From the NCBI GenBank assembly GCA_004764695.1, contig SMSO01000036.1, positions 2,356,001 through 2,420,000 of the forward strand: a DNA stretch of 64,000 nt, written 5' to 3'. Within the stretch, counting starts at the first letter, position 1, and every line of letters starts with the position of its first letter. This document shows positions 57,584 to 64,000 of the stretch, piece after piece. The notes under the pieces were generated by a model. It was not told where the DNA came from, ran no database searches, and saw only the letters and a list, made by a program, of their open reading frames with translations. Source of the DNA: Schizochytrium sp. TIO01 (Eukaryota; Protista; Bigyra: Labyrinthulomycetes). The translations under genes were made by a program, and so were the position numbers.

Positions 57584-60500
57584 GTTTTTCGCTGCTGGAG
57601 CTTGCGATTAATATATTATAATTTCAACCTGGATTCACATCACCAGTTCAATATTCAACTCTGCATAAGTAAACGATGTAAATCACAACAAAAGGCTTAA
57701 AGTCATCTCACTTTCTTTCTAAGTATTTGCAGTCATAATCTTGCCGATGAACTTTTCAAAATACGAATATGCTGATCTTTTACATGTAAAACCTGATTCA
57801 TTGGGCCACCATGTCACAGTCTCCGTTTAAGAGGCTCTTGGCAGCAATAAATTATGCTCCCTTATAAGAAGTTTGAATGTTCATGCTTCGTTTTACGCTG
57901 GCATATGCCGGTAGTAGACTTTTTTGGTGTTGGAAACCTTGCAAAATTCAAGTAGAAAGAAATTTTGTGTAGAATTCATTAACAAGAACCTGATCTTCAG
58001 CAGGTTTGATTCATTAGCTTACCTTTTTGTCCATTACATCATGGTGCTTGTTTAACTTTGTGCACGTTTAAACCAGGATGTTAAAGCCTAATATGAGTCA
58101 GATTTCAATTTTCTCTTTTATAATCAACCAAAAGATTGTCCCTGGGCCCTTTTCAGCAGTGGTGAACATCCTTTGTCCATTCCTTACGACAACTAGCACC
58201 ATGTTTCAAGTATCGTCTCTTGAAGATGGTGCTTTCTGTCCTTTACCTTATGTCCTGTGGCTCAAAGCCCCGGTAGAACTCAGCTGCTCAATGCATGAAG
58301 CTTATTTATAACCCAAGAATACAAATTTGACTTTGCTTCGAATCATCAGGGTAACTGAACAGTATGATATGTGTTTCGATGTTGGATAGTCCAGGAGAAA
58401 ATGGAATGCTGCATTGTGAAGCAAGATCCAACTTTGGTGATAACTCACTGTATAGATGTTCAGAGAGATGCGCATTTCGATGAATAGTTTCCCAACATAC
58501 CTGGCCTCACCCTAACGTATGACACCATAATATACTGTACCATGATTGCTCAAACCATGCTAAAGCGTGATTTAGTTCGTATTGACATGAACCTTCAGAC
58601 ATCATTTTTCATTTGAAACGAGCTTCATATATTTGAAAAACACAAGATTGTCAGTCATTAGCCTCAGAACGAGCTAGCAATAGCCCTAGTATTTAGTTTG
58701 TTGCGGATACAGGTTTGCTTAAACGAGAAATCTGAAAGAATCCATTCATGCTATCTGAGCATTCAGCGCTTCTTACGTCAAACGAACCCCGTAACGAAGC
58801 AAGTTTGCAGTATATGTCCATCAATACATTATAATGAACTTATGGATGCAGTCCTTCGCACCTATCTTCAAGCGTAGAGCGCAGTATTAAAGCTTCTTTT
58901 ATTCACCTAGAAGAAGCAAGTATGCAAATATTTAACGTCATGTAGATGTGTTGTTCCAACCAAGAAACGAGGCAAGTAGATGCATCTGACATATTCAATG
59001 AAAGATTGTCTCCATCTGGTGCTTGGTTCTTTTCACTTTTGCTACAGGTCAAAAGATTTTCTCAAGTGCATGCCTCCACCGGATATCACTCTGTTATGAG
59101 TCAATAAGAGTATTGTCTAGCTTGGCTTGAGAAAGTTTTTGTTCTCTTCTTAATACCAATGCATTAAGCTTTTGTCAGTTTGTCCTCCCTCGATTTTTGT
59201 TTTTGTTTTTGTATAATAAAATAATAAGAGAAGTGCATCACCGGTCATTCCCACGACAGCAGTCATAAAGGTTGTATTTCTTTAAGAAAGTCGAACAACA
59301 AAATATCACCAATCCGATCAAAGTCCACCTATATTCGCAAAAACACCTTTTTTTCCAAATCTTGGTAGATACCCTTGATAACGTACTCTTCCCTCCCTTT
59401 AAAGATCCTTGCCAAATCACAACACGTGAAAAGAGATGCTCAGAGACCAATTAGCTTAAGCAAACTATAAACAGGATGATGCTAATGAAGCATCAAAATC
59501 CAACATTAACAAGTCGTCACGATGAAGTATCCTGCATGCGTTGCCAATCCTTCTTTGTCTCATCTCTGGATAGCGTCTTTCCTTTATGAAAGTGAGATCG
59601 CCAAAGATAGATCCATTTACCACCCGCTAAACCGGTACTCTGGAGGAGAATGAATCCCAAGGACCAGCGAGAGTCCACTGTCAGACCCCTTGCCCCACCC
59701 AAGCTTTTAATGACACCACCACCAACACTATCGACCTTGAGTGACAATTCCCATCCACCGCTCTCGACTTGAGCAAGTAGTAGCACCCTTTGCACACTAC
59801 TCTAGCTCGTGTGTATGTACTCCACTGCTTGTAGGTAAGTGCCACCCGTGCACCGTAGCACATTCGAATCCGGCCAACGTGATCTCGGGGCCCCGAAGTC
59901 ACCAAAACGAAACTGGGTTCCGCAATCAAAGGACGGTTATAGCGAAAACAACAACAACAACAATAAACAAACACCCCAACAAAAAGAAAGAACAGCGGAA
60001 TAGAACGCTCAGAGAACAGAGCTCCGGCTCGATGAGAATGCACCGCAGAAAGTAAGCAAATCAAAGGGATTGTCATTGGTCGGTTTGCAGAGAGCGGTGC
60101 TCGCAACCTGCGCAGCCGCTGGCCTCGAGATGATCTGCGTGGACTCTGGGCAGCGCTGAGGAGCGCAGCGAAGAAGAAGCAGCAGCAGATCAGAGTCTTC
60201 TTCTAAGGAAAGGCGCTTCGAAGAGATGAAGAAGTGGAAAGAACACCTGGCATGGCGCCTAAGAGTGTCCTATCCGTCGCTAGGACCCCGTATTATAAAC
60301 AAGAACACATTGCAGTCAGTACCTCGGCAGCTGAAGAAAGGAGGAATCAATCGACCATTCGACGCGCAGGACAGGCGAGGACACGTCGAGGCCAGGCAAA
60401 GGGGGGCTGAGGCTCTGCCGCGGTTTTGGGGAGTGATCAGGACAGACGGCATTGCCTGGCTCGAAATGAAGATGAAGCATCGATTGATGGAATGGAGACT

Positions 60501-60703
60501 GATGAGGGTCCTATTGACTGTTAGGGGGCTTAGCGGAAACTCCGAAGTTGGGGAAATGAGATCAAAGCAGATGAATTGAAGAGAAGAGACTGAGACAGAC
60601 CTAGAACCAAAGTCCTCTTGCGGGAAGAGGCTGGCGAGCTCGGAGCGTGCAGGCACGGAGCGAGGCACGGAGCGAGACAGGGTTGTTGCTGCAATAAGCC
60701 ATC

Positions 60704-62380
60704 ATGGGCGAAGATTCTGGCGCCCCGAAGGGCGCAGACAGTGGTAAACCCGCGTCCCCGACATCGCCAACTCCGGCTTCGTCAGCGTCTCAGGGTAGCG
60801 CCTCAAGCACGTTCCTGGGCATCGCGATGTCACTTGCGGGTCTCGTGGCACTCGTTGCGGCCCTTGCAGGCGTCGTGGGCGTGGTTGCGGAGAATAACCC
60901 AAAGCTGAAAGCAGCTGTGGTGGATTTTTTTCCGGAGGAGCTCGTGATTGTCGTCGAAGACGCCACGGGACTCTCGCTGCTCACGCGTGGAGGCTTCAAA
61001 CGCAGCCGCGAGGAGCTCTTGCTCGCCCAAGAGAACACACCTGCTGCCCCTGTGACCTTCTCCGTCCACTTTAACGGAGACGGCCTCAGTGAAGGCGTGC
61101 TTAAGAATTCCGCAGAGTACCCCGGTCTTGACGCCCTTATTTACGAAGCGTGTCTCGAAATTCCCGAGGTCCTTGAGATCGTTGCAGAAGGAGATATCGA
61201 GAAGCATCATGAGATCTGTAAGCCAGAAGAAGGAGCGAAGCTTTTCACAGCAAGAGGCCGGAGAGTACTTTCTTTTCATGATATTGAAGAGGGCCAGCGC
61301 ACGTACGTGGTACCACAGGGACTCCATTTTGTGTGGCCTCTAGGAGAGGTTGGGAGCATATGGACTCCAGATAGCGTGGAGTCGCCGATCCCGAGCAAAC
61401 CGATTCGGCTGAGGCAATTGAGCAAGTCACCGCGGGTATTCACTGTAGAAAATTTTATGTCACCAGAGGAGATGCAGGCGATTTTGGACCATAATAAAGA
61501 CCTCCTGAAACCCAGTGAAGTTGGATTTGCAGGCTGGAGGGATAGCACACGCACAAGCAGTACAGCGTGGGACTTTCACTCATGGGCAGCACGCAAGGTT
61601 CAAAAACGAAGCTTTGACCTCCTCGGCATGGACTTTGATGGGTCTATGGCTGACGCCGTACAGGTGCTACGATACAATATCGCGGAGTGGTACAAGCCGC
61701 ACACCGACTGGTTTGACAAGAAAGCCTATGATGGACATGATCCCAAAATCAACAATGGTACCAACCGCTTCGCTACCGTCTTTCTTTATCTCACTGATGT
61801 CGAAGAAGGTGGACACACTGTCTTCCCACTCTCCACTACGCACGAGGGATACAATGGAGAGCAGCTCGTCCATCCTGGCACTGAGAAAACTGCCGGATAC
61901 ATTGCTCAGCGAGATGCCGAGTGGGTCTGCAACACATCCTCCACTGCACTGCGCTCGCAGCCGAAGGCAGGCAACGCTGTGCTATTCTACAGCCAAGAGG
62001 CCGATGGCTCCCTCGACAAATACAGCCTGCACGGCGGCTGCCCTGTTATTGCAGGCACCAAGTACAGCGCTAATGTTTGGATCTGGAACCGCCCCAAGCC
62101 TGGTAAGGATCAGGCCAAGGATGGCAAGGCAAAGAATGATGACACTAAAATCGAGATGCAGTTTCACAATGCGCGTAATGAGCCTATTGAGCTCTTCTGG
62201 GACAACGGGTCCACAGAGGGCGTCTTTCAAGTTCTCATCGACCCCGGCATGTACTCACCAATGACCACTTATCATGGTCACTCCTTTTTTGCTCGTCCTG
62301 TTGGGAGTGCCGAACGCATCTTCTTTTTCACTGCTAGTGACGCCATGAAGAGTAAGGAGTATGTTGCGCAGATCGTGTAA
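60704..62380 (+). CDS. Membrane-anchored prolyl 4-hydroxylase-like 2OG-Fe(II) dioxygenase with DCX-like and VHL-beta-like accessory domains
   Basis: TM segment at aa ~37-62; LSKSPRVFTVENFMSPEE, RTSSTAW, QVLRY, YKPHTD (HxD), RFATVFLYLTDVEEGGHTVFP, PKAGNAVLFY, SLHGGCPVIAGTKYSANVW (distal His and 2OG-binding Lys). Confidence 0.93.
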   Translation: MGEDSGAPKGADSGKPASPTSPTPASSASQGSASSTFLGIAMSLAGLVALVAALAGVVGVVAENNPKLKAAVVDFFPEELVIVVEDATGLSLLTRGGFKRSREELLLAQENTPAAPVTFSVHFNGDGLSEGVLKNSAEYPGLDALIYEACLEIPEVLEIVAEGDIEKHHEICKPEEGAKLFTARGRRVLSFHDIEEGQRTYVVPQGLHFVWPLGEVGSIWTPDSVESPIPSKPIRLRQLSKSPRVFTVENFMSPEEMQAILDHNKDLLKPSEVGFAGWRDSTRTSSTAWDFHSWAARKVQKRSFDLLGMDFDGSMADAVQVLRYNIAEWYKPHTDWFDKKAYDGHDPKINNGTNRFATVFLYLTDVEEGGHTVFPLSTTHEGYNGEQLVHPGTEKTAGYIAQRDAEWVCNTSSTALRSQPKAGNAVLFYSQEADGSLDKYSLHGGCPVIAGTKYSANVWIWNRPKPGKDQAKDGKAKNDDTKIEMQFHNARNEPIELFWDNGSTEGVFQVLIDPGMYSPMTTYHGHSFFARPVGSAERIFFFTASDAMKSKEYVAQIV

Positions 62381-63230
62381 ATCAAAGGTTGCCTTGTTCC
62401 TGTCTCCATTCTTACACATGCCTCCATGGCGTGCATACACAAACATATGCATGCATGCATACATACAAACGACGATATATACTTACCTACTCGCATGCAA
62501 ACATCTACTAGGACCTTTGGTTTTCTTTGTCTTCATCATCATTGTTTCCGCTGGTTTGACATGATGTTTTCAACTGTCCACAGTATTCGGCTGTCTGACA
62601 ATAAACTTCAAAATAGCTGTTGTGCTCCCTTGGCTAGCCATTTTGAGCCACCATGACAGTTCTTCCTAAAATCGACCATTACTAATATTCTTATTTTGTA
62701 TTATACCTAGCTAAGGAAGGCGGCGAGGAAATATGTCAATTCCAACCCACATTACGTTTAGTGGACGGAGCCAGCTTCGATCTATTTGATAGAATTCTGT
62801 GGAGGTAAGGCTGCTTCGTTGCCCCTATCATCAGTCCAGATTTTAGATATCAACATTCTCCTAAAAGCGCACTTGCTCGAATAACTTTGTATATCTTGCC
62901 TCCTAATTCTATCTTGTGCTCGACTCCTCCTGTTTAACCCTCTATTTCTTTCGAGTATAGAGGCTGAAAAATGAATACGGTCAGCGAGAGGTTCATTATG
63001 GGAAGAGGGCTGAAGAATGCATCATAAATTTTGGCTTTTGGAATGAACATCCGTTATCCACAGAACTGGGTACTAAGGTGGACTCATTTATATAACAATT
63101 TTGGGACTGAGTCATATCTTTTCTGTATCTTATGGTGACGCAAATCTGAAGAGGCTAGGTTATCTAATTCAGTCATCTTTAGATTTCGCCATATTAAGTC
63201 TATTGAAATTGTATGTATGCTGAAAGGTGG

Positions 63231-63636
63231 TTCTGATTAGCTTGAGGTTGACTGTAAAGATGAAGGCAAGAGGCTTGATGAAGGCTTTAAGAAGGTTGGT
63301 TTACGAGTCAGCAAACTGCTGTCCTGGGAAATGAACTCCAGGACAGATGCATTCATGTAGTAGTTAGGGAGATTAAGACATTCTTGAAAGTAGTTAAAGA
63401 TAATCGATGGGGTTAGGTTAATCCAACTTCTCCGACCATGGATTCAAGCTAAACCATGCCTGGGTGTAGGTAATGTGTATCCACACTTATAGTTCTTGGC
63501 TTCAGCAGTCACGTGAGTCTGGTTGCCTTATTCTTGCTCTATTGTAAACCTTATGTCTACTGGGGTTTTACAAAGGGACACCAAGAACTTTAGCAATGTC
63601 TTGTCCACTAGTTCCTTCGATTGGAGATCTCAGCAA
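63231..63636. repeat. Dispersed repeat, copy 2 (pairs with 33904-34283)
   Basis: Colinear similarity to 33904-34283 with substitutions and indels; the central part is more diverged and slightly longer. Confidence 0.9.
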
Positions 63637-64000
63637 TGCATACGTTCAGTTGTTGGAGTTATTGGCTCCACAGTTTCGTATCAGATTGTCTAGTTCTAAT
63701 CCAATTTGTAAACTAATTATCTAGGACTTACATCTAGTAATACCGTGTCCTTATTGGGGCTTTAAGCAGGTATATTCTTTCGTACCTCTCTCTCTCTTAT
63801 ACCAATCTGTCAGTTGTGAAAATATATACTATTAAGAGATCAGATTTAGAGCGTTGAATGGCACTGATGTGTTCAATCTCTTTCTATTTCTCTTTTTCCG
63901 GATCTTGGATGCCACACTGATTTCTCTCAAACACTGTATGTATAATGCGAGGTTATTGTTAAGGTAAAAAATTAATGGAACCTGTGTGTAACTAGGTCAT

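What the first reader, a model, noticed from the sequence alone, without database searches (positions are those of the whole stretch)
62150..62380. Prolyl hydroxylase fused to a VHL-beta-like domain: hydroxyproline writer and reader in one protein
Seen: after the P4H catalytic domain, the last 76 aa read IEMQFHNARNEPIELFWDNGSTEGVFQVLIDPGMYSPMTTYHGHSFFARPVG. Established: the von Hippel-Lindau beta domain (F.N.S...V..VW....G.P..Y..L.PG......SYRGHLWLFR) binds hydroxyproline through W88, Y98, S111, H115 and W117. By-eye alignment keeps the F-x-N strand, W88, the PG turn, T for S111, Y112, G114, H115 and F for W117; Y98 becomes Q. Inference: the enzyme may bind its own product, for processive hydroxylation of Pro-rich substrates or for O2-dependent docking. 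That would recapitulate the animal PHD-VHL oxygen-sensing pair as one polypeptide in a non-animal eukaryote. The N-terminal signal anchor suggests a secretory-pathway location. Similar domains may already be in databases for stramenopiles; I cannot tell how well this is described.
Basis: partly seen in the sequence, partly recalled or inferred. Interest (0 to 1): 0.85.

Follow-up and report, generated by a model that had tools for sequence, protein, structure and literature searches.

The report
Prolyl hydroxylase carrying a VHL-like domain
A marine protist (thraustochytrid) makes a membrane-anchored prolyl 4-hydroxylase whose last 76 residues are a true relative of the hydroxyproline-binding half of the human VHL tumour suppressor; the same pairing recurs across many protists, which suggests that making and reading hydroxyproline were linked long before animal oxygen sensing.

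Summary
Window 62150-62380 encodes the last 76 aa of an intronless, expressed 558-aa ORF (60704-62380, +). The protein has an N-terminal membrane anchor, a conserved N-domain, an algal/collagen-type prolyl 4-hydroxylase (P4H) and a flexible linker before the tail.

The tail is a VHL beta-domain homologue:
- phmmer from the tail reaches Pfam-certified bacterial VHL-beta repeats.
- A mixed profile hits only pVHL in the PDB (E 4e-11).
- The AF2 model (pLDDT 96) superposes on pVHL 72-152 (Z 10, rmsd 2.0 Å).
- Pfam itself misses the tail.

The hydroxyl-binding pair S111/H115 is kept as T522/H526, and W88 as W499. W117 becomes F and Y98 becomes Q, a conserved "W-Q-T/S-H-F" pocket variant.

The fusion is not a one-off. 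87 of 115 P4H homologues carry it (thraustochytrids, oomycetes, pelagophytes, chlorarachniophytes). Two other architectures exist, and this genome holds at least four such genes.

Hydroxyproline binding itself is inferred, not shown. The "PHD-VHL oxygen sensor in one chain" reading is not supported: there is no VHL alpha domain, the catalytic domain is not PHD-type, and the protein is probably lumenal.

The scan noted the same theme before on other DNA of this genome (s1-840050, s1-837480). I found no paper describing it.

The parts
60590..62700 (+). Unspliced, polyadenylated mRNA spanning the whole ORF
   Evidence: Contigs of four runs from four studies start at 60590-60612 and end at 62700-62948 without joints. 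The X1 contig ends at 62700 followed by 24 A. The runs are only guessed to be RNA, but the contig ends and the poly(A) run fit a transcript.
60704..62380 (+). Intronless ORF of 558 aa (stop included)
   Evidence: Orthologues of the same length and architecture are P0002 (Hondaea fermentalgiana, 78% identity) and P0003.
60809..60889 (+). Single N-terminal hydrophobic anchor (aa 36-62), preceded by a Ser/Pro-rich disordered tail (aa 1-35)
   Evidence: Kyte-Doolittle 19-residue peak of 2.63, the only segment above 1.6. Predicted as helix 34-62. Orientation is inferred from plant/algal type II P4Hs, not tested.
61031..61408 (+). Conserved alpha/beta N-domain (aa ~110-235) of unknown function
   Evidence: pLDDT 92-98 in the full-length model. 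Conserved NGDG and VPxGxHFVWP motifs across 69 homologues. No Pfam match. Another first-reader note calls it DCX-like; this was not tested here.
61409..62089 (+). Prolyl 4-hydroxylase catalytic domain (aa 236-462). Includes H333-x-D335 (61700-61708), H443 (62030-62032) and the 2OG-binding K453 (62060-62062).
   Evidence: H333 and D335 are invariant, and H443 and K453 at least 90% conserved, in 69 homologues. The best structural match is Cr-P4H-1 3gze (TM 0.79 on the target, 31% identity).
62090..62149 (+). Lys/Asp-rich linker (aa 463-482)
   Evidence: The linker has the lowest confidence between the folded domains: the block aa 471-480 has pLDDT 67. Sequence printed.
62150..62377 (+). VHL beta-like seven-stranded sandwich (aa 483-558). 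Pocket codons: W499 at 62198-62200, Q509 at 62228-62230, T522 at 62267-62269, H526 at 62279-62281, F528 at 62285-62287.

Best explanation
The gene encodes a secretory-pathway, membrane-anchored prolyl 4-hydroxylase of the algal/collagen type. Its C-terminal 76 residues form an independent VHL beta-type sandwich tethered by a flexible linker.

The sandwich most likely acts as a peptide-binding module for the enzyme's proline-rich clients. It probably recognises 4-hydroxyproline through the conserved Thr522/His526 pair in a cage formed by Trp499, Gln509 and Phe528. Once one proline is hydroxylated, the enzyme would then stay attached to its product and work along neighbouring prolines. This is a writer-reader coupling, like a carbohydrate-binding module on a glycosidase.

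Shown here: homology, fold, residue conservation, recurrent fusion and expression. Inferred: lumenal location, peptide binding, preference for hydroxyproline and processivity.
For: Homology:
- The tail finds 43 proteins at E<=1e-3. Of these, 14 are Pfam PF01847 (best 2.4e-98), and P0014 is hit at 9.4e-9.
- A profile of the tail, own-genome paralogues and bacterial repeats hits only pVHL in the PDB, at 4e-11; the next hit is at 0.19.
- hhalign of this family against a second family whose tail passes Pfam's cut-off gives Prob 95.4, E 1.7e-8.
- ESM Atlas neighbours are VHL-beta clusters, score 0.94.

Fold:
- The AF2 model has pLDDT 95.9.
- All top Foldseek hits are pVHL, TM 0.81-0.83, rmsd 2.2 Å.
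- VIA-align gives Z 10.0, rmsd 2.0 Å, 75 of 76 residues aligned, against 7.6 for the next fold.
- The same seven strands appear with a family-only alignment.

Pocket:
- In 88 P4H-fused tails, S/T111 is kept in 88/88, H115 in 86/88, W/F117 in 87/88 and W88 in 70/72 aligned.
- These are among the best-conserved positions of the domain.
- Ser111 and His115 make the critical contacts with hydroxyproline in pVHL (PMC8013866).

Recurrent fusion:
- 87 of 115 P4H homologues carry the tail.
- A second architecture is signal peptide-VHLb-VHLb-P4H.
- A third is anchor-thioredoxin-like-PF13640-like oxygenase-VHLb; 51 of 63 of its homologues keep the tail.
- The genome holds at least four such genes.

Expression as one mRNA.
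Against: - No binding data exist, and I could not inspect model coordinates, so pocket geometry is unchecked.
- Y98 is Q and W117 is F, so two of the three aromatic walls differ from pVHL.
- The window's tail does not reach Pfam's VHL threshold. It gave no hit at E<=10; the orthologue scores 17.6 bits and the paralogue 13.8 bits against a cut-off of 21.
- A protist-only two-domain profile found nothing in the PDB.
- Bacterial VHL-beta proteins keep the same Thr/His pair, yet three of four such genomes sampled lack a PF13640 hydroxylase and the fourth has it unlinked. The conserved pocket therefore need not mean hydroxyproline.
- Some homologous domains sit in apparently cytosolic proteins with ankyrin or MORN repeats.
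Confidence: 0.5

Rival explanations
1. The VHL beta-like domain binds the unhydroxylated proline-rich substrate (polyproline-II stretches). It would play the role that the peptide-substrate-binding domain plays in animal collagen P4H alpha subunits, recruiting substrate rather than reading product.
For: - Accessory substrate-binding domains are usual in collagen-type P4Hs (established knowledge).
- The domain occurs on either side of the catalytic domain and in one or two copies, as expected of a generic tethering module.
- The pocket differs from pVHL at Y98 and W117.
Against: The two polar residues that in pVHL hydrogen-bond the 4-hydroxyl are almost invariant: S/T in 88/88 and H in 86/88. 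That is hard to explain if only a hydrocarbon ring is bound.
Confidence: 0.2
2. The domain binds something other than a prolyl peptide (for example a glycan, an O-glycosylated Hyp, or another protein), or it serves mainly as a structural or oligomerisation module. The conserved Thr/His/Trp cluster would then be a general ligand or fold feature of the superfamily.
For: - Bacterial VHL-beta repeats keep the cluster without a P4H in the genome.
- They sit in large surface-type proteins with PKD, Big, SprB and Por_Secre_tail domains.
- Weaker structural neighbours include starch-binding CBM20 domains at Z 5.4-5.7.
- The published view is that the function of prokaryotic VHL-beta domains is unknown (PMC7736814).
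Against: - The protist branch closest to this tail is overwhelmingly fused to prolyl hydroxylase-type oxygenases, in three architectures. This argues for a ligand tied to prolyl hydroxylation.
- pVHL stands well above any CBM in structural similarity (Z 10.0 against 5.4-5.7).
Confidence: 0.22
3. A one-chain version of the animal PHD-VHL oxygen sensor. Oxygen-dependent self- or client-hydroxylation would create a docking site that triggers degradation or signalling in the cytosol.
For: Only the co-occurrence of a prolyl hydroxylase and a VHL-beta homologue in one protein supports it.
Against: - There is no alpha domain or BC box; the ORF ends at the VHL-equivalent residue ~152.
- The catalytic domain is Cr-P4H/collagen-type, not PHD-type.
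- N-terminal anchors and signal peptides point to the secretory pathway.
- A six-frame search of the genome found no canonical VHL. The two extra weak hits are noise.
Confidence: 0.03

Closest known systems
pVHL beta domain (human VHL residues ~63-154; Pfam PF01847)
   Same: - Seven-stranded sandwich, superposable over 75 of 76 residues at 2.0 Å (Z 10.0) with an ungapped sequence register.
- N78, W88, P103-G104, Y112, G114 and H115 are identical. S111 is conserved as Thr and W117 as Phe.
   Different: - No alpha domain or BC box, so no link to elongin C/Cul2.
- Y98 is Gln.
- Scores below Pfam's cut-off.
- Fused to an enzyme and probably lumenal rather than cytosolic or nuclear.
- Hydroxyproline binding is untested.
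Chlamydomonas reinhardtii prolyl 4-hydroxylase 1 (PDB 2jig, 3gze) and plant type II membrane P4Hs
   Same: - Catalytic domain 31% identical; phmmer E 1e-23; Foldseek E 5e-17.
- HxD...H triad and 2OG-binding Lys are kept.
- N-terminal membrane anchor as in plant P4Hs (established knowledge).
   Different: - Has an extra conserved N-domain and the C-terminal VHL beta-like domain.
- Some plant P4Hs instead carry a C-terminal ShK/Tox domain (from my own knowledge, not tested here).
Bacterial 'VHL beta domain-containing proteins' (e.g. the Amaricoccus sp. B4 1888-aa protein with nine repeats)
   Same: Same domain family. The tail hits it at E 9.4e-9, and it scores 2.4e-98 on PF01847.
   Different: - The bacterial pocket is the pVHL type, W/Y/T/H/W, in 70 of 87 repeats. 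Hydroxylase-fused protist domains are W/Q(M)/T(S)/H/F.
- The bacterial proteins are repeat arrays not linked to a P4H.
- Their function is unknown (PMC7736814).
Second oxygenase-VHL-beta family of the same genome (G000 C36, loci L001/L007; Hondaea FCC1311_021902/021912)
   Same: - Membrane anchor, 2OG oxygenase of the PF13640 kind and a C-terminal VHL beta domain with the same W-Q-T/S-H-F pocket.
- Its tail passes Pfam's cut-off (27.6 bits) and hits human VHL directly by phmmer.
   Different: - The catalytic domain is very divergent: Pfam blank for most members and no PDB hit by profile.
- It has a thioredoxin-like N-terminal region instead of the N-domain seen here.

Membership tests
VHL beta domain (Pfam PF01847) | Score at or above Pfam's gathering cut-off (21 bits) | tested here: not met
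   No hit at E<=10 for the whole protein or for the tail. The orthologue P0003 scores 17.6 bits and the paralogue 13.8 bits.
VHL beta domain (superfamily level) | Statistically supported homology to certified members and to pVHL itself | tested here: met
   - Tail to P0014 at 9.4e-9 in 1.8 billion proteins; P0014 scores 2.4e-98 on PF01847.
- Mixed profile against the PDB: only pVHL, 4e-11.
- hhalign to the family-III tail: Prob 95.4.
VHL beta domain (superfamily level) | Seven-stranded beta sandwich superposable on pVHL residues ~63-154 | tested here: met
   AF2 pLDDT 95.9. Foldseek TM 0.81-0.83. VIA-align Z 10.0, rmsd 2.0 Å, 75 residues, VHL 72-152.
VHL beta domain as hydroxyproline reader | Ser111/His115 pair that binds the 4-hydroxyl | tested here: met
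   T522 and H526 in the window. S/T in 88/88 and H in 86/88 P4H-fused tails. Role of the pair in pVHL: PMC8013866.
VHL beta domain as hydroxyproline reader | Aromatic cage W88/Y98/W117 | tested here: inconclusive
   W88 is kept (W499), W117 is Phe (F528) and Y98 is Gln (Q509). The W/Q/T/H/F variant is conserved in two hydroxylase-fused families.
VHL beta domain as hydroxyproline reader | Selective binding of Hyp over Pro peptides | not testable with these tools
   Needs binding assays.
pVHL E3 substrate receptor | Alpha domain with BC box/Cul2 box after the beta domain | tested here: not met
   The ORF stops at the VHL-equivalent residue ~152.
Collagen/algal-type prolyl 4-hydroxylase (PF13640, P4Hc) | Double-stranded beta-helix with HxD...H iron triad and 2OG-binding Lys; closest structures are P4Hs | tested here: met
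   - PF13640 at 1e-13; 2jig at 1e-23.
- H333 and D335 invariant; H443 and K453 at least 90% conserved.
- Foldseek top hits are Cr-P4H-1, B. anthracis P4H, C-P4H-II and P4H-TM.
HIF prolyl hydroxylase (PHD/EGLN) type | Closest relatives are PHD2-like enzymes | tested here: not met
   PHD2 appears only at rank 35 and below, at 15% identity and E 1e-7, against 31% and 5e-17 for Cr-P4H-1.

The most novel reading that the evidence does not exclude
VHL beta-type recognition of hydroxyproline is much older than animals and was ancestrally coupled to prolyl 4-hydroxylases. It binds the Hyp product in the secretory pathway and makes hydroxylation of Pro-rich wall or matrix proteins processive. The animal HIF-VHL degron would then be a late cytosolic re-use of an existing Hyp-binding module.
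Probability: 0.4. Interest if true: 0.85.

Novelty: new variant of a known kind. Interest (0 to 1): 0.72.

Why it matters
pVHL is the only well-understood hydroxyproline reader. It is generally treated as an animal (at most holozoan) invention tied to HIF (PMC9618697), and prokaryotic VHL-beta domains are called functionally unknown (PMC7736814).

Here a VHL-beta homologue with the hydroxyl-binding pair intact is physically fused to prolyl hydroxylases. The fusion occurs in three architectures and across thraustochytrids, oomycetes (including plant and animal pathogens), pelagophytes, chlorarachniophytes and a foraminifer. Almost none of it is annotated: only 2 of 120 listed homologues carry PF01847.

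If the domain binds Hyp, three things follow:
- It is the first writer-reader enzyme for prolyl hydroxylation.
- It gives a route to the origin of the VHL pocket.
- It provides small, stable Hyp-binding domains that could serve as reagents.

All of this can be tested with simple peptide-binding and enzyme assays.

Tried and rejected
- Direct Pfam scan of the protein and of the tail: only PF13640, no VHL.
- phmmer of the tail against the PDB: nothing relevant.
- A profile of protist two-domain proteins plus the tail (A2) against the PDB: no hit. The link to pVHL needed the bacterial repeats and the family-III domain.
I therefore saw no genomic context or sample origin for the metagenomic homologues.
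- Profile of family III against the PDB: only VHL, so the oxygenase part was not identified that way. Its 2OG-oxygenase nature rests on PF13640 hits in 3 of 18 members, source names and ESM neighbours.
- Test for a P4H link in bacteria: negative. VHL-beta was found in 4 of 401 Pseudomonadota sampled, and PF13640 in one of those four genomes, on another contig.
- Two further weak PF01847 hits in the genome (L002, L003) translate to junk and were rejected.
- A tree of the 55-column domain resolves only a family-III clade (support 0.82) and a bacterial clade (0.86). It cannot place animal VHL, because no animal sequence was available by reference.
- Pocket geometry could not be measured, because model coordinates are not exposed.
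- No tRNA or Rfam family lies in 59000-64000.
Full report
**What is there.** The stretch 62150-62380 is the 3' end of an uninterrupted ORF, 60704-62380 on the + strand, of 558 aa.

Contigs from four public runs of four studies cover 60590/60612 to 62700-62948 without any joint. One contig ends at 62700 followed by 24 A. The gene is therefore intronless and expressed as one polyadenylated mRNA that includes the tail. The runs are only guessed to be RNA, but the contig ends and the poly(A) run fit a transcript.

The nearest named orthologue is a Hondaea fermentalgiana protein annotated "Prolyl 4-hydroxylase subunit alpha-1" (78% identity). The organism is thus a thraustochytrid.

**Anatomy of the protein.**
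- A Ser/Pro-rich disordered head, then a single hydrophobic anchor at aa 36-62. This is the only segment above the Kyte-Doolittle threshold and is predicted helical.
- A confidently modelled, family-conserved alpha/beta N-domain at aa ~110-235, with no Pfam match.
- A prolyl 4-hydroxylase domain at aa 236-462. PF13640 matches at 1e-13 and Chlamydomonas P4H 2jig at 1e-23. H333-x-D335 are invariant, and H443 and K453 at least 90% conserved, in 69 homologues.
- A Lys/Asp-rich linker. It has the lowest confidence between the folded domains (pLDDT 67).
- The 76-residue tail.

The full model's best structural matches are algal Cr-P4H-1 (31% identity, E 5e-17), then bacterial, viral and human collagen-type P4Hs. 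HIF-PHD2 comes far lower, at 15% identity and E 1e-7.

**Is the tail a VHL beta domain?** Direct searches fail. Pfam gives nothing for this protein, and phmmer of the tail against the PDB gives nothing. Four independent lines then agree.

1. *Transitive sequence search.* phmmer of the tail against 1.8 billion representatives finds 43 proteins. Fourteen of them are Pfam PF01847, with a best E of 2.4e-98. One is a nine-repeat Amaricoccus protein named "VHL beta domain-containing protein", hit at E 9.4e-9.
2. *Profile search.* An ungapped alignment was made of the tail, two further domains of this genome, one close homologue and the nine bacterial repeats. As a profile it hits only pVHL chains in the PDB, at 4e-11; the next hit is at 0.19.
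3. *A bridging family.* A second family in this genome has a tail that passes Pfam's cut-off (27.6 bits) and hits human VHL directly by phmmer in an ungapped alignment. hhalign links the window's family to it at Prob 95.4, E 1.7e-8.
4. *Predicted fold.* The AF2 model of the tail (pLDDT 95.9, no templates) has seven strands. All top Foldseek hits are pVHL, at TM 0.81-0.83 and rmsd 2.2 Å. A Foldseek-independent scan of 48,161 chains puts pVHL first at Z 10.0 (rmsd 2.0 Å, 75 of 76 residues, VHL 72-152), against 7.6 for the next fold. The same strands appear in the full-length model, which was built from a family-only alignment without bacterial rows.

ESM Atlas neighbours are also VHL-beta clusters. 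I take homology as established. By Pfam's own threshold, however, the tail is not a member.

**The pocket.** The register is ungapped, with tail residue i equal to VHL residue 71+i.

| pVHL residue | Window residue |
|---|---|
| W88 | W499 |
| Y98 | Q509 |
| S111 | T522 |
| Y112 | Y523 |
| G114-H115 | G525-H526 |
| W117 | F528 |
| N78 | N489 |

In pVHL, Ser111 and His115 make the critical contacts with hydroxyproline (PMC8013866). The aromatic cage W88/Y98/W117 is textbook knowledge that I did not re-derive.

Across 88 P4H-fused tails, the Ser/Thr is kept in 88/88, His in 86/88, Trp/Phe at position 117 in 87/88 and W88 in 70/72 aligned. Position 98 is Gln (37) or Met (22), never Tyr.

Sorting 291 domain instances shows two pocket types:
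- Bacterial repeats have the pVHL type W/Y/T/H/W (70 of 87).
- Hydroxylase-fused protist domains have W/Q/T(S)/H/F. This holds for 41 of 88 in this family and 46 of 52 in the second family. An oomycete subgroup has W/M/S(T)/H/W.

The polar pair that would bind a hydroxyl is thus retained, while the walls of the cage are a distinct, conserved variant.

**How common is the fusion?** It is very common and almost unannotated.
- Of 115 further homologues of this P4H, 87 carry the C-terminal domain by my local HMM. They include Aurantiochytrium, two Hondaea genes, the oomycetes Phytophthora, Aphanomyces, Achlya and Plasmopara, the pelagophytes Aureococcus, CCMP2097 and Chrysophaeum, the chlorarachniophytes Amorphochlora and Partenskyella, and a Chaetoceros transcript.
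- Only 2 of the 120 listed proteins have PF01847 on record.
- A second architecture is signal peptide, one or two VHL-beta domains, then P4H. It occurs in metagenomic and transcriptomic proteins and in the foraminifer Nonionella stella. Some short "two-domain" proteins are truncated models of it: P0013 is a fragment of the 541-aa P0120.
- A third architecture is anchor, thioredoxin-like region, divergent PF13640-type oxygenase, then VHL-beta. It has 63 homologues, of which 51 keep the tail.
- This genome holds at least four such genes: the window's gene, a 550-aa paralogue on C24 (43% identical tail), and a convergent pair of the third type on C36. It has at least 16 PF13640 loci in all.
- A six-frame search found no canonical VHL. 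The two remaining weak hits are noise.

**Mechanism.** Recurrent, differently ordered fusion to prolyl hydroxylases argues that the domain's ligand is tied to prolyl hydroxylation. So does the flexible linker and the near-invariant Thr/His pair.

My best reading (confidence about 0.5) is a tethered reader of the enzyme's own product. It would keep the enzyme on Pro-rich clients in the ER/Golgi lumen and favour multiple hydroxylation. Lumenal topology is inferred from plant and algal type II P4Hs and from the signal peptides of the second architecture. It was not tested.

The rivals are:
- binding of unhydroxylated polyproline substrate (0.2);
- another ligand, or a structural role (0.22);
- a cytosolic oxygen-sensing device (0.03).

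The last is disfavoured by the missing alpha domain, the non-PHD catalytic domain and the secretory signals.

The main caution comes from bacteria. VHL-beta is rare there (4 of 401 Pseudomonadota sampled). Those genomes mostly lack a PF13640 hydroxylase, yet their repeats keep the pocket. Some eukaryotic relatives carry ankyrin or MORN repeats and look cytosolic.

**Known or new?** Full-text searches found:
- pVHL treated as an animal or holozoan component (PMC9618697);
- prokaryotic VHL-beta domains described as of unknown function (PMC7736814);
- one purely in-silico note on a bacterial VHL-domain protein (PMC9002001).

I found no paper on a hydroxylase-VHL-beta fusion. The library lacks most subscription journals, so this is not proof of absence.

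The scan itself had already noted the theme on other DNA of this genome. s1-840050 is the C36 pair, with a follow-up reaching the same reading. s1-837480 is another P4H-VHL note. I reached the C36 pair and the C24 paralogue independently before reading those notes.

**Limits.**
- E-values from my local HMM scans refer to small sets.

Noticed in passing
window 61031-61408 (aa ~110-235): Conserved alpha/beta N-domain between the anchor and the P4H domain, with NGDG and VPxGxHFVWP motifs. It is confidently modelled (pLDDT 92-98) and has no Pfam match. Another first-reader note (s1-851212) calls it DCX-like. The strand-helix order is compatible with a small beta-grasp, but I ran no fold search on it alone.
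   Followed up: partly
window 63540-63640: A dispersed repeat of ~96-100 bases with a sharp 3' edge near 63636. The genome holds at least 40 scored copies at 92-97% identity, out of 282 candidates. In the RNA-like assemblies it has very high depth, and contigs run on into many different sequences. No tRNA or Rfam match.
   Followed up: partly
G000 C36:1805253-1806923 (L007:70-1740, +) and C36:1807858-1809558 (L001:1372-3072, -): A convergent pair of genes for anchor, thioredoxin-like region, divergent 2OG oxygenase and VHL-beta proteins. The real product of one is the 677-aa P0057. The same adjacent pair exists in Hondaea (FCC1311_021902/021912).
   Followed up: yes
proteins P0134, P0090, P0094, P0101, P0157, P0158, P0178: Close homologues of thraustochytrid proteins are filed under Durusdinium trenchii (68% identity to the window's protein) and under Batrachochytrium salamandrivorans assemblies BASA81/BASA82. 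This may be labyrinthulomycete contamination of those assemblies.
   Followed up: no
P0011 (Pfiesteria piscicida), aa 137-177: One VHL-beta repeat also touches Pfam PF12904, 'putative collagen-binding domain of a collagenase' (22.3 bits, cut-off 22). This hints at a possible relationship between the two families.
   Followed up: no
P0216 (Plasmopara halstedii): A P4H-VHL-beta protein of this family is annotated 'RxLR-like protein' in a plant-pathogenic oomycete. The label is probably an artefact of its N-terminal signal region.
   Followed up: no
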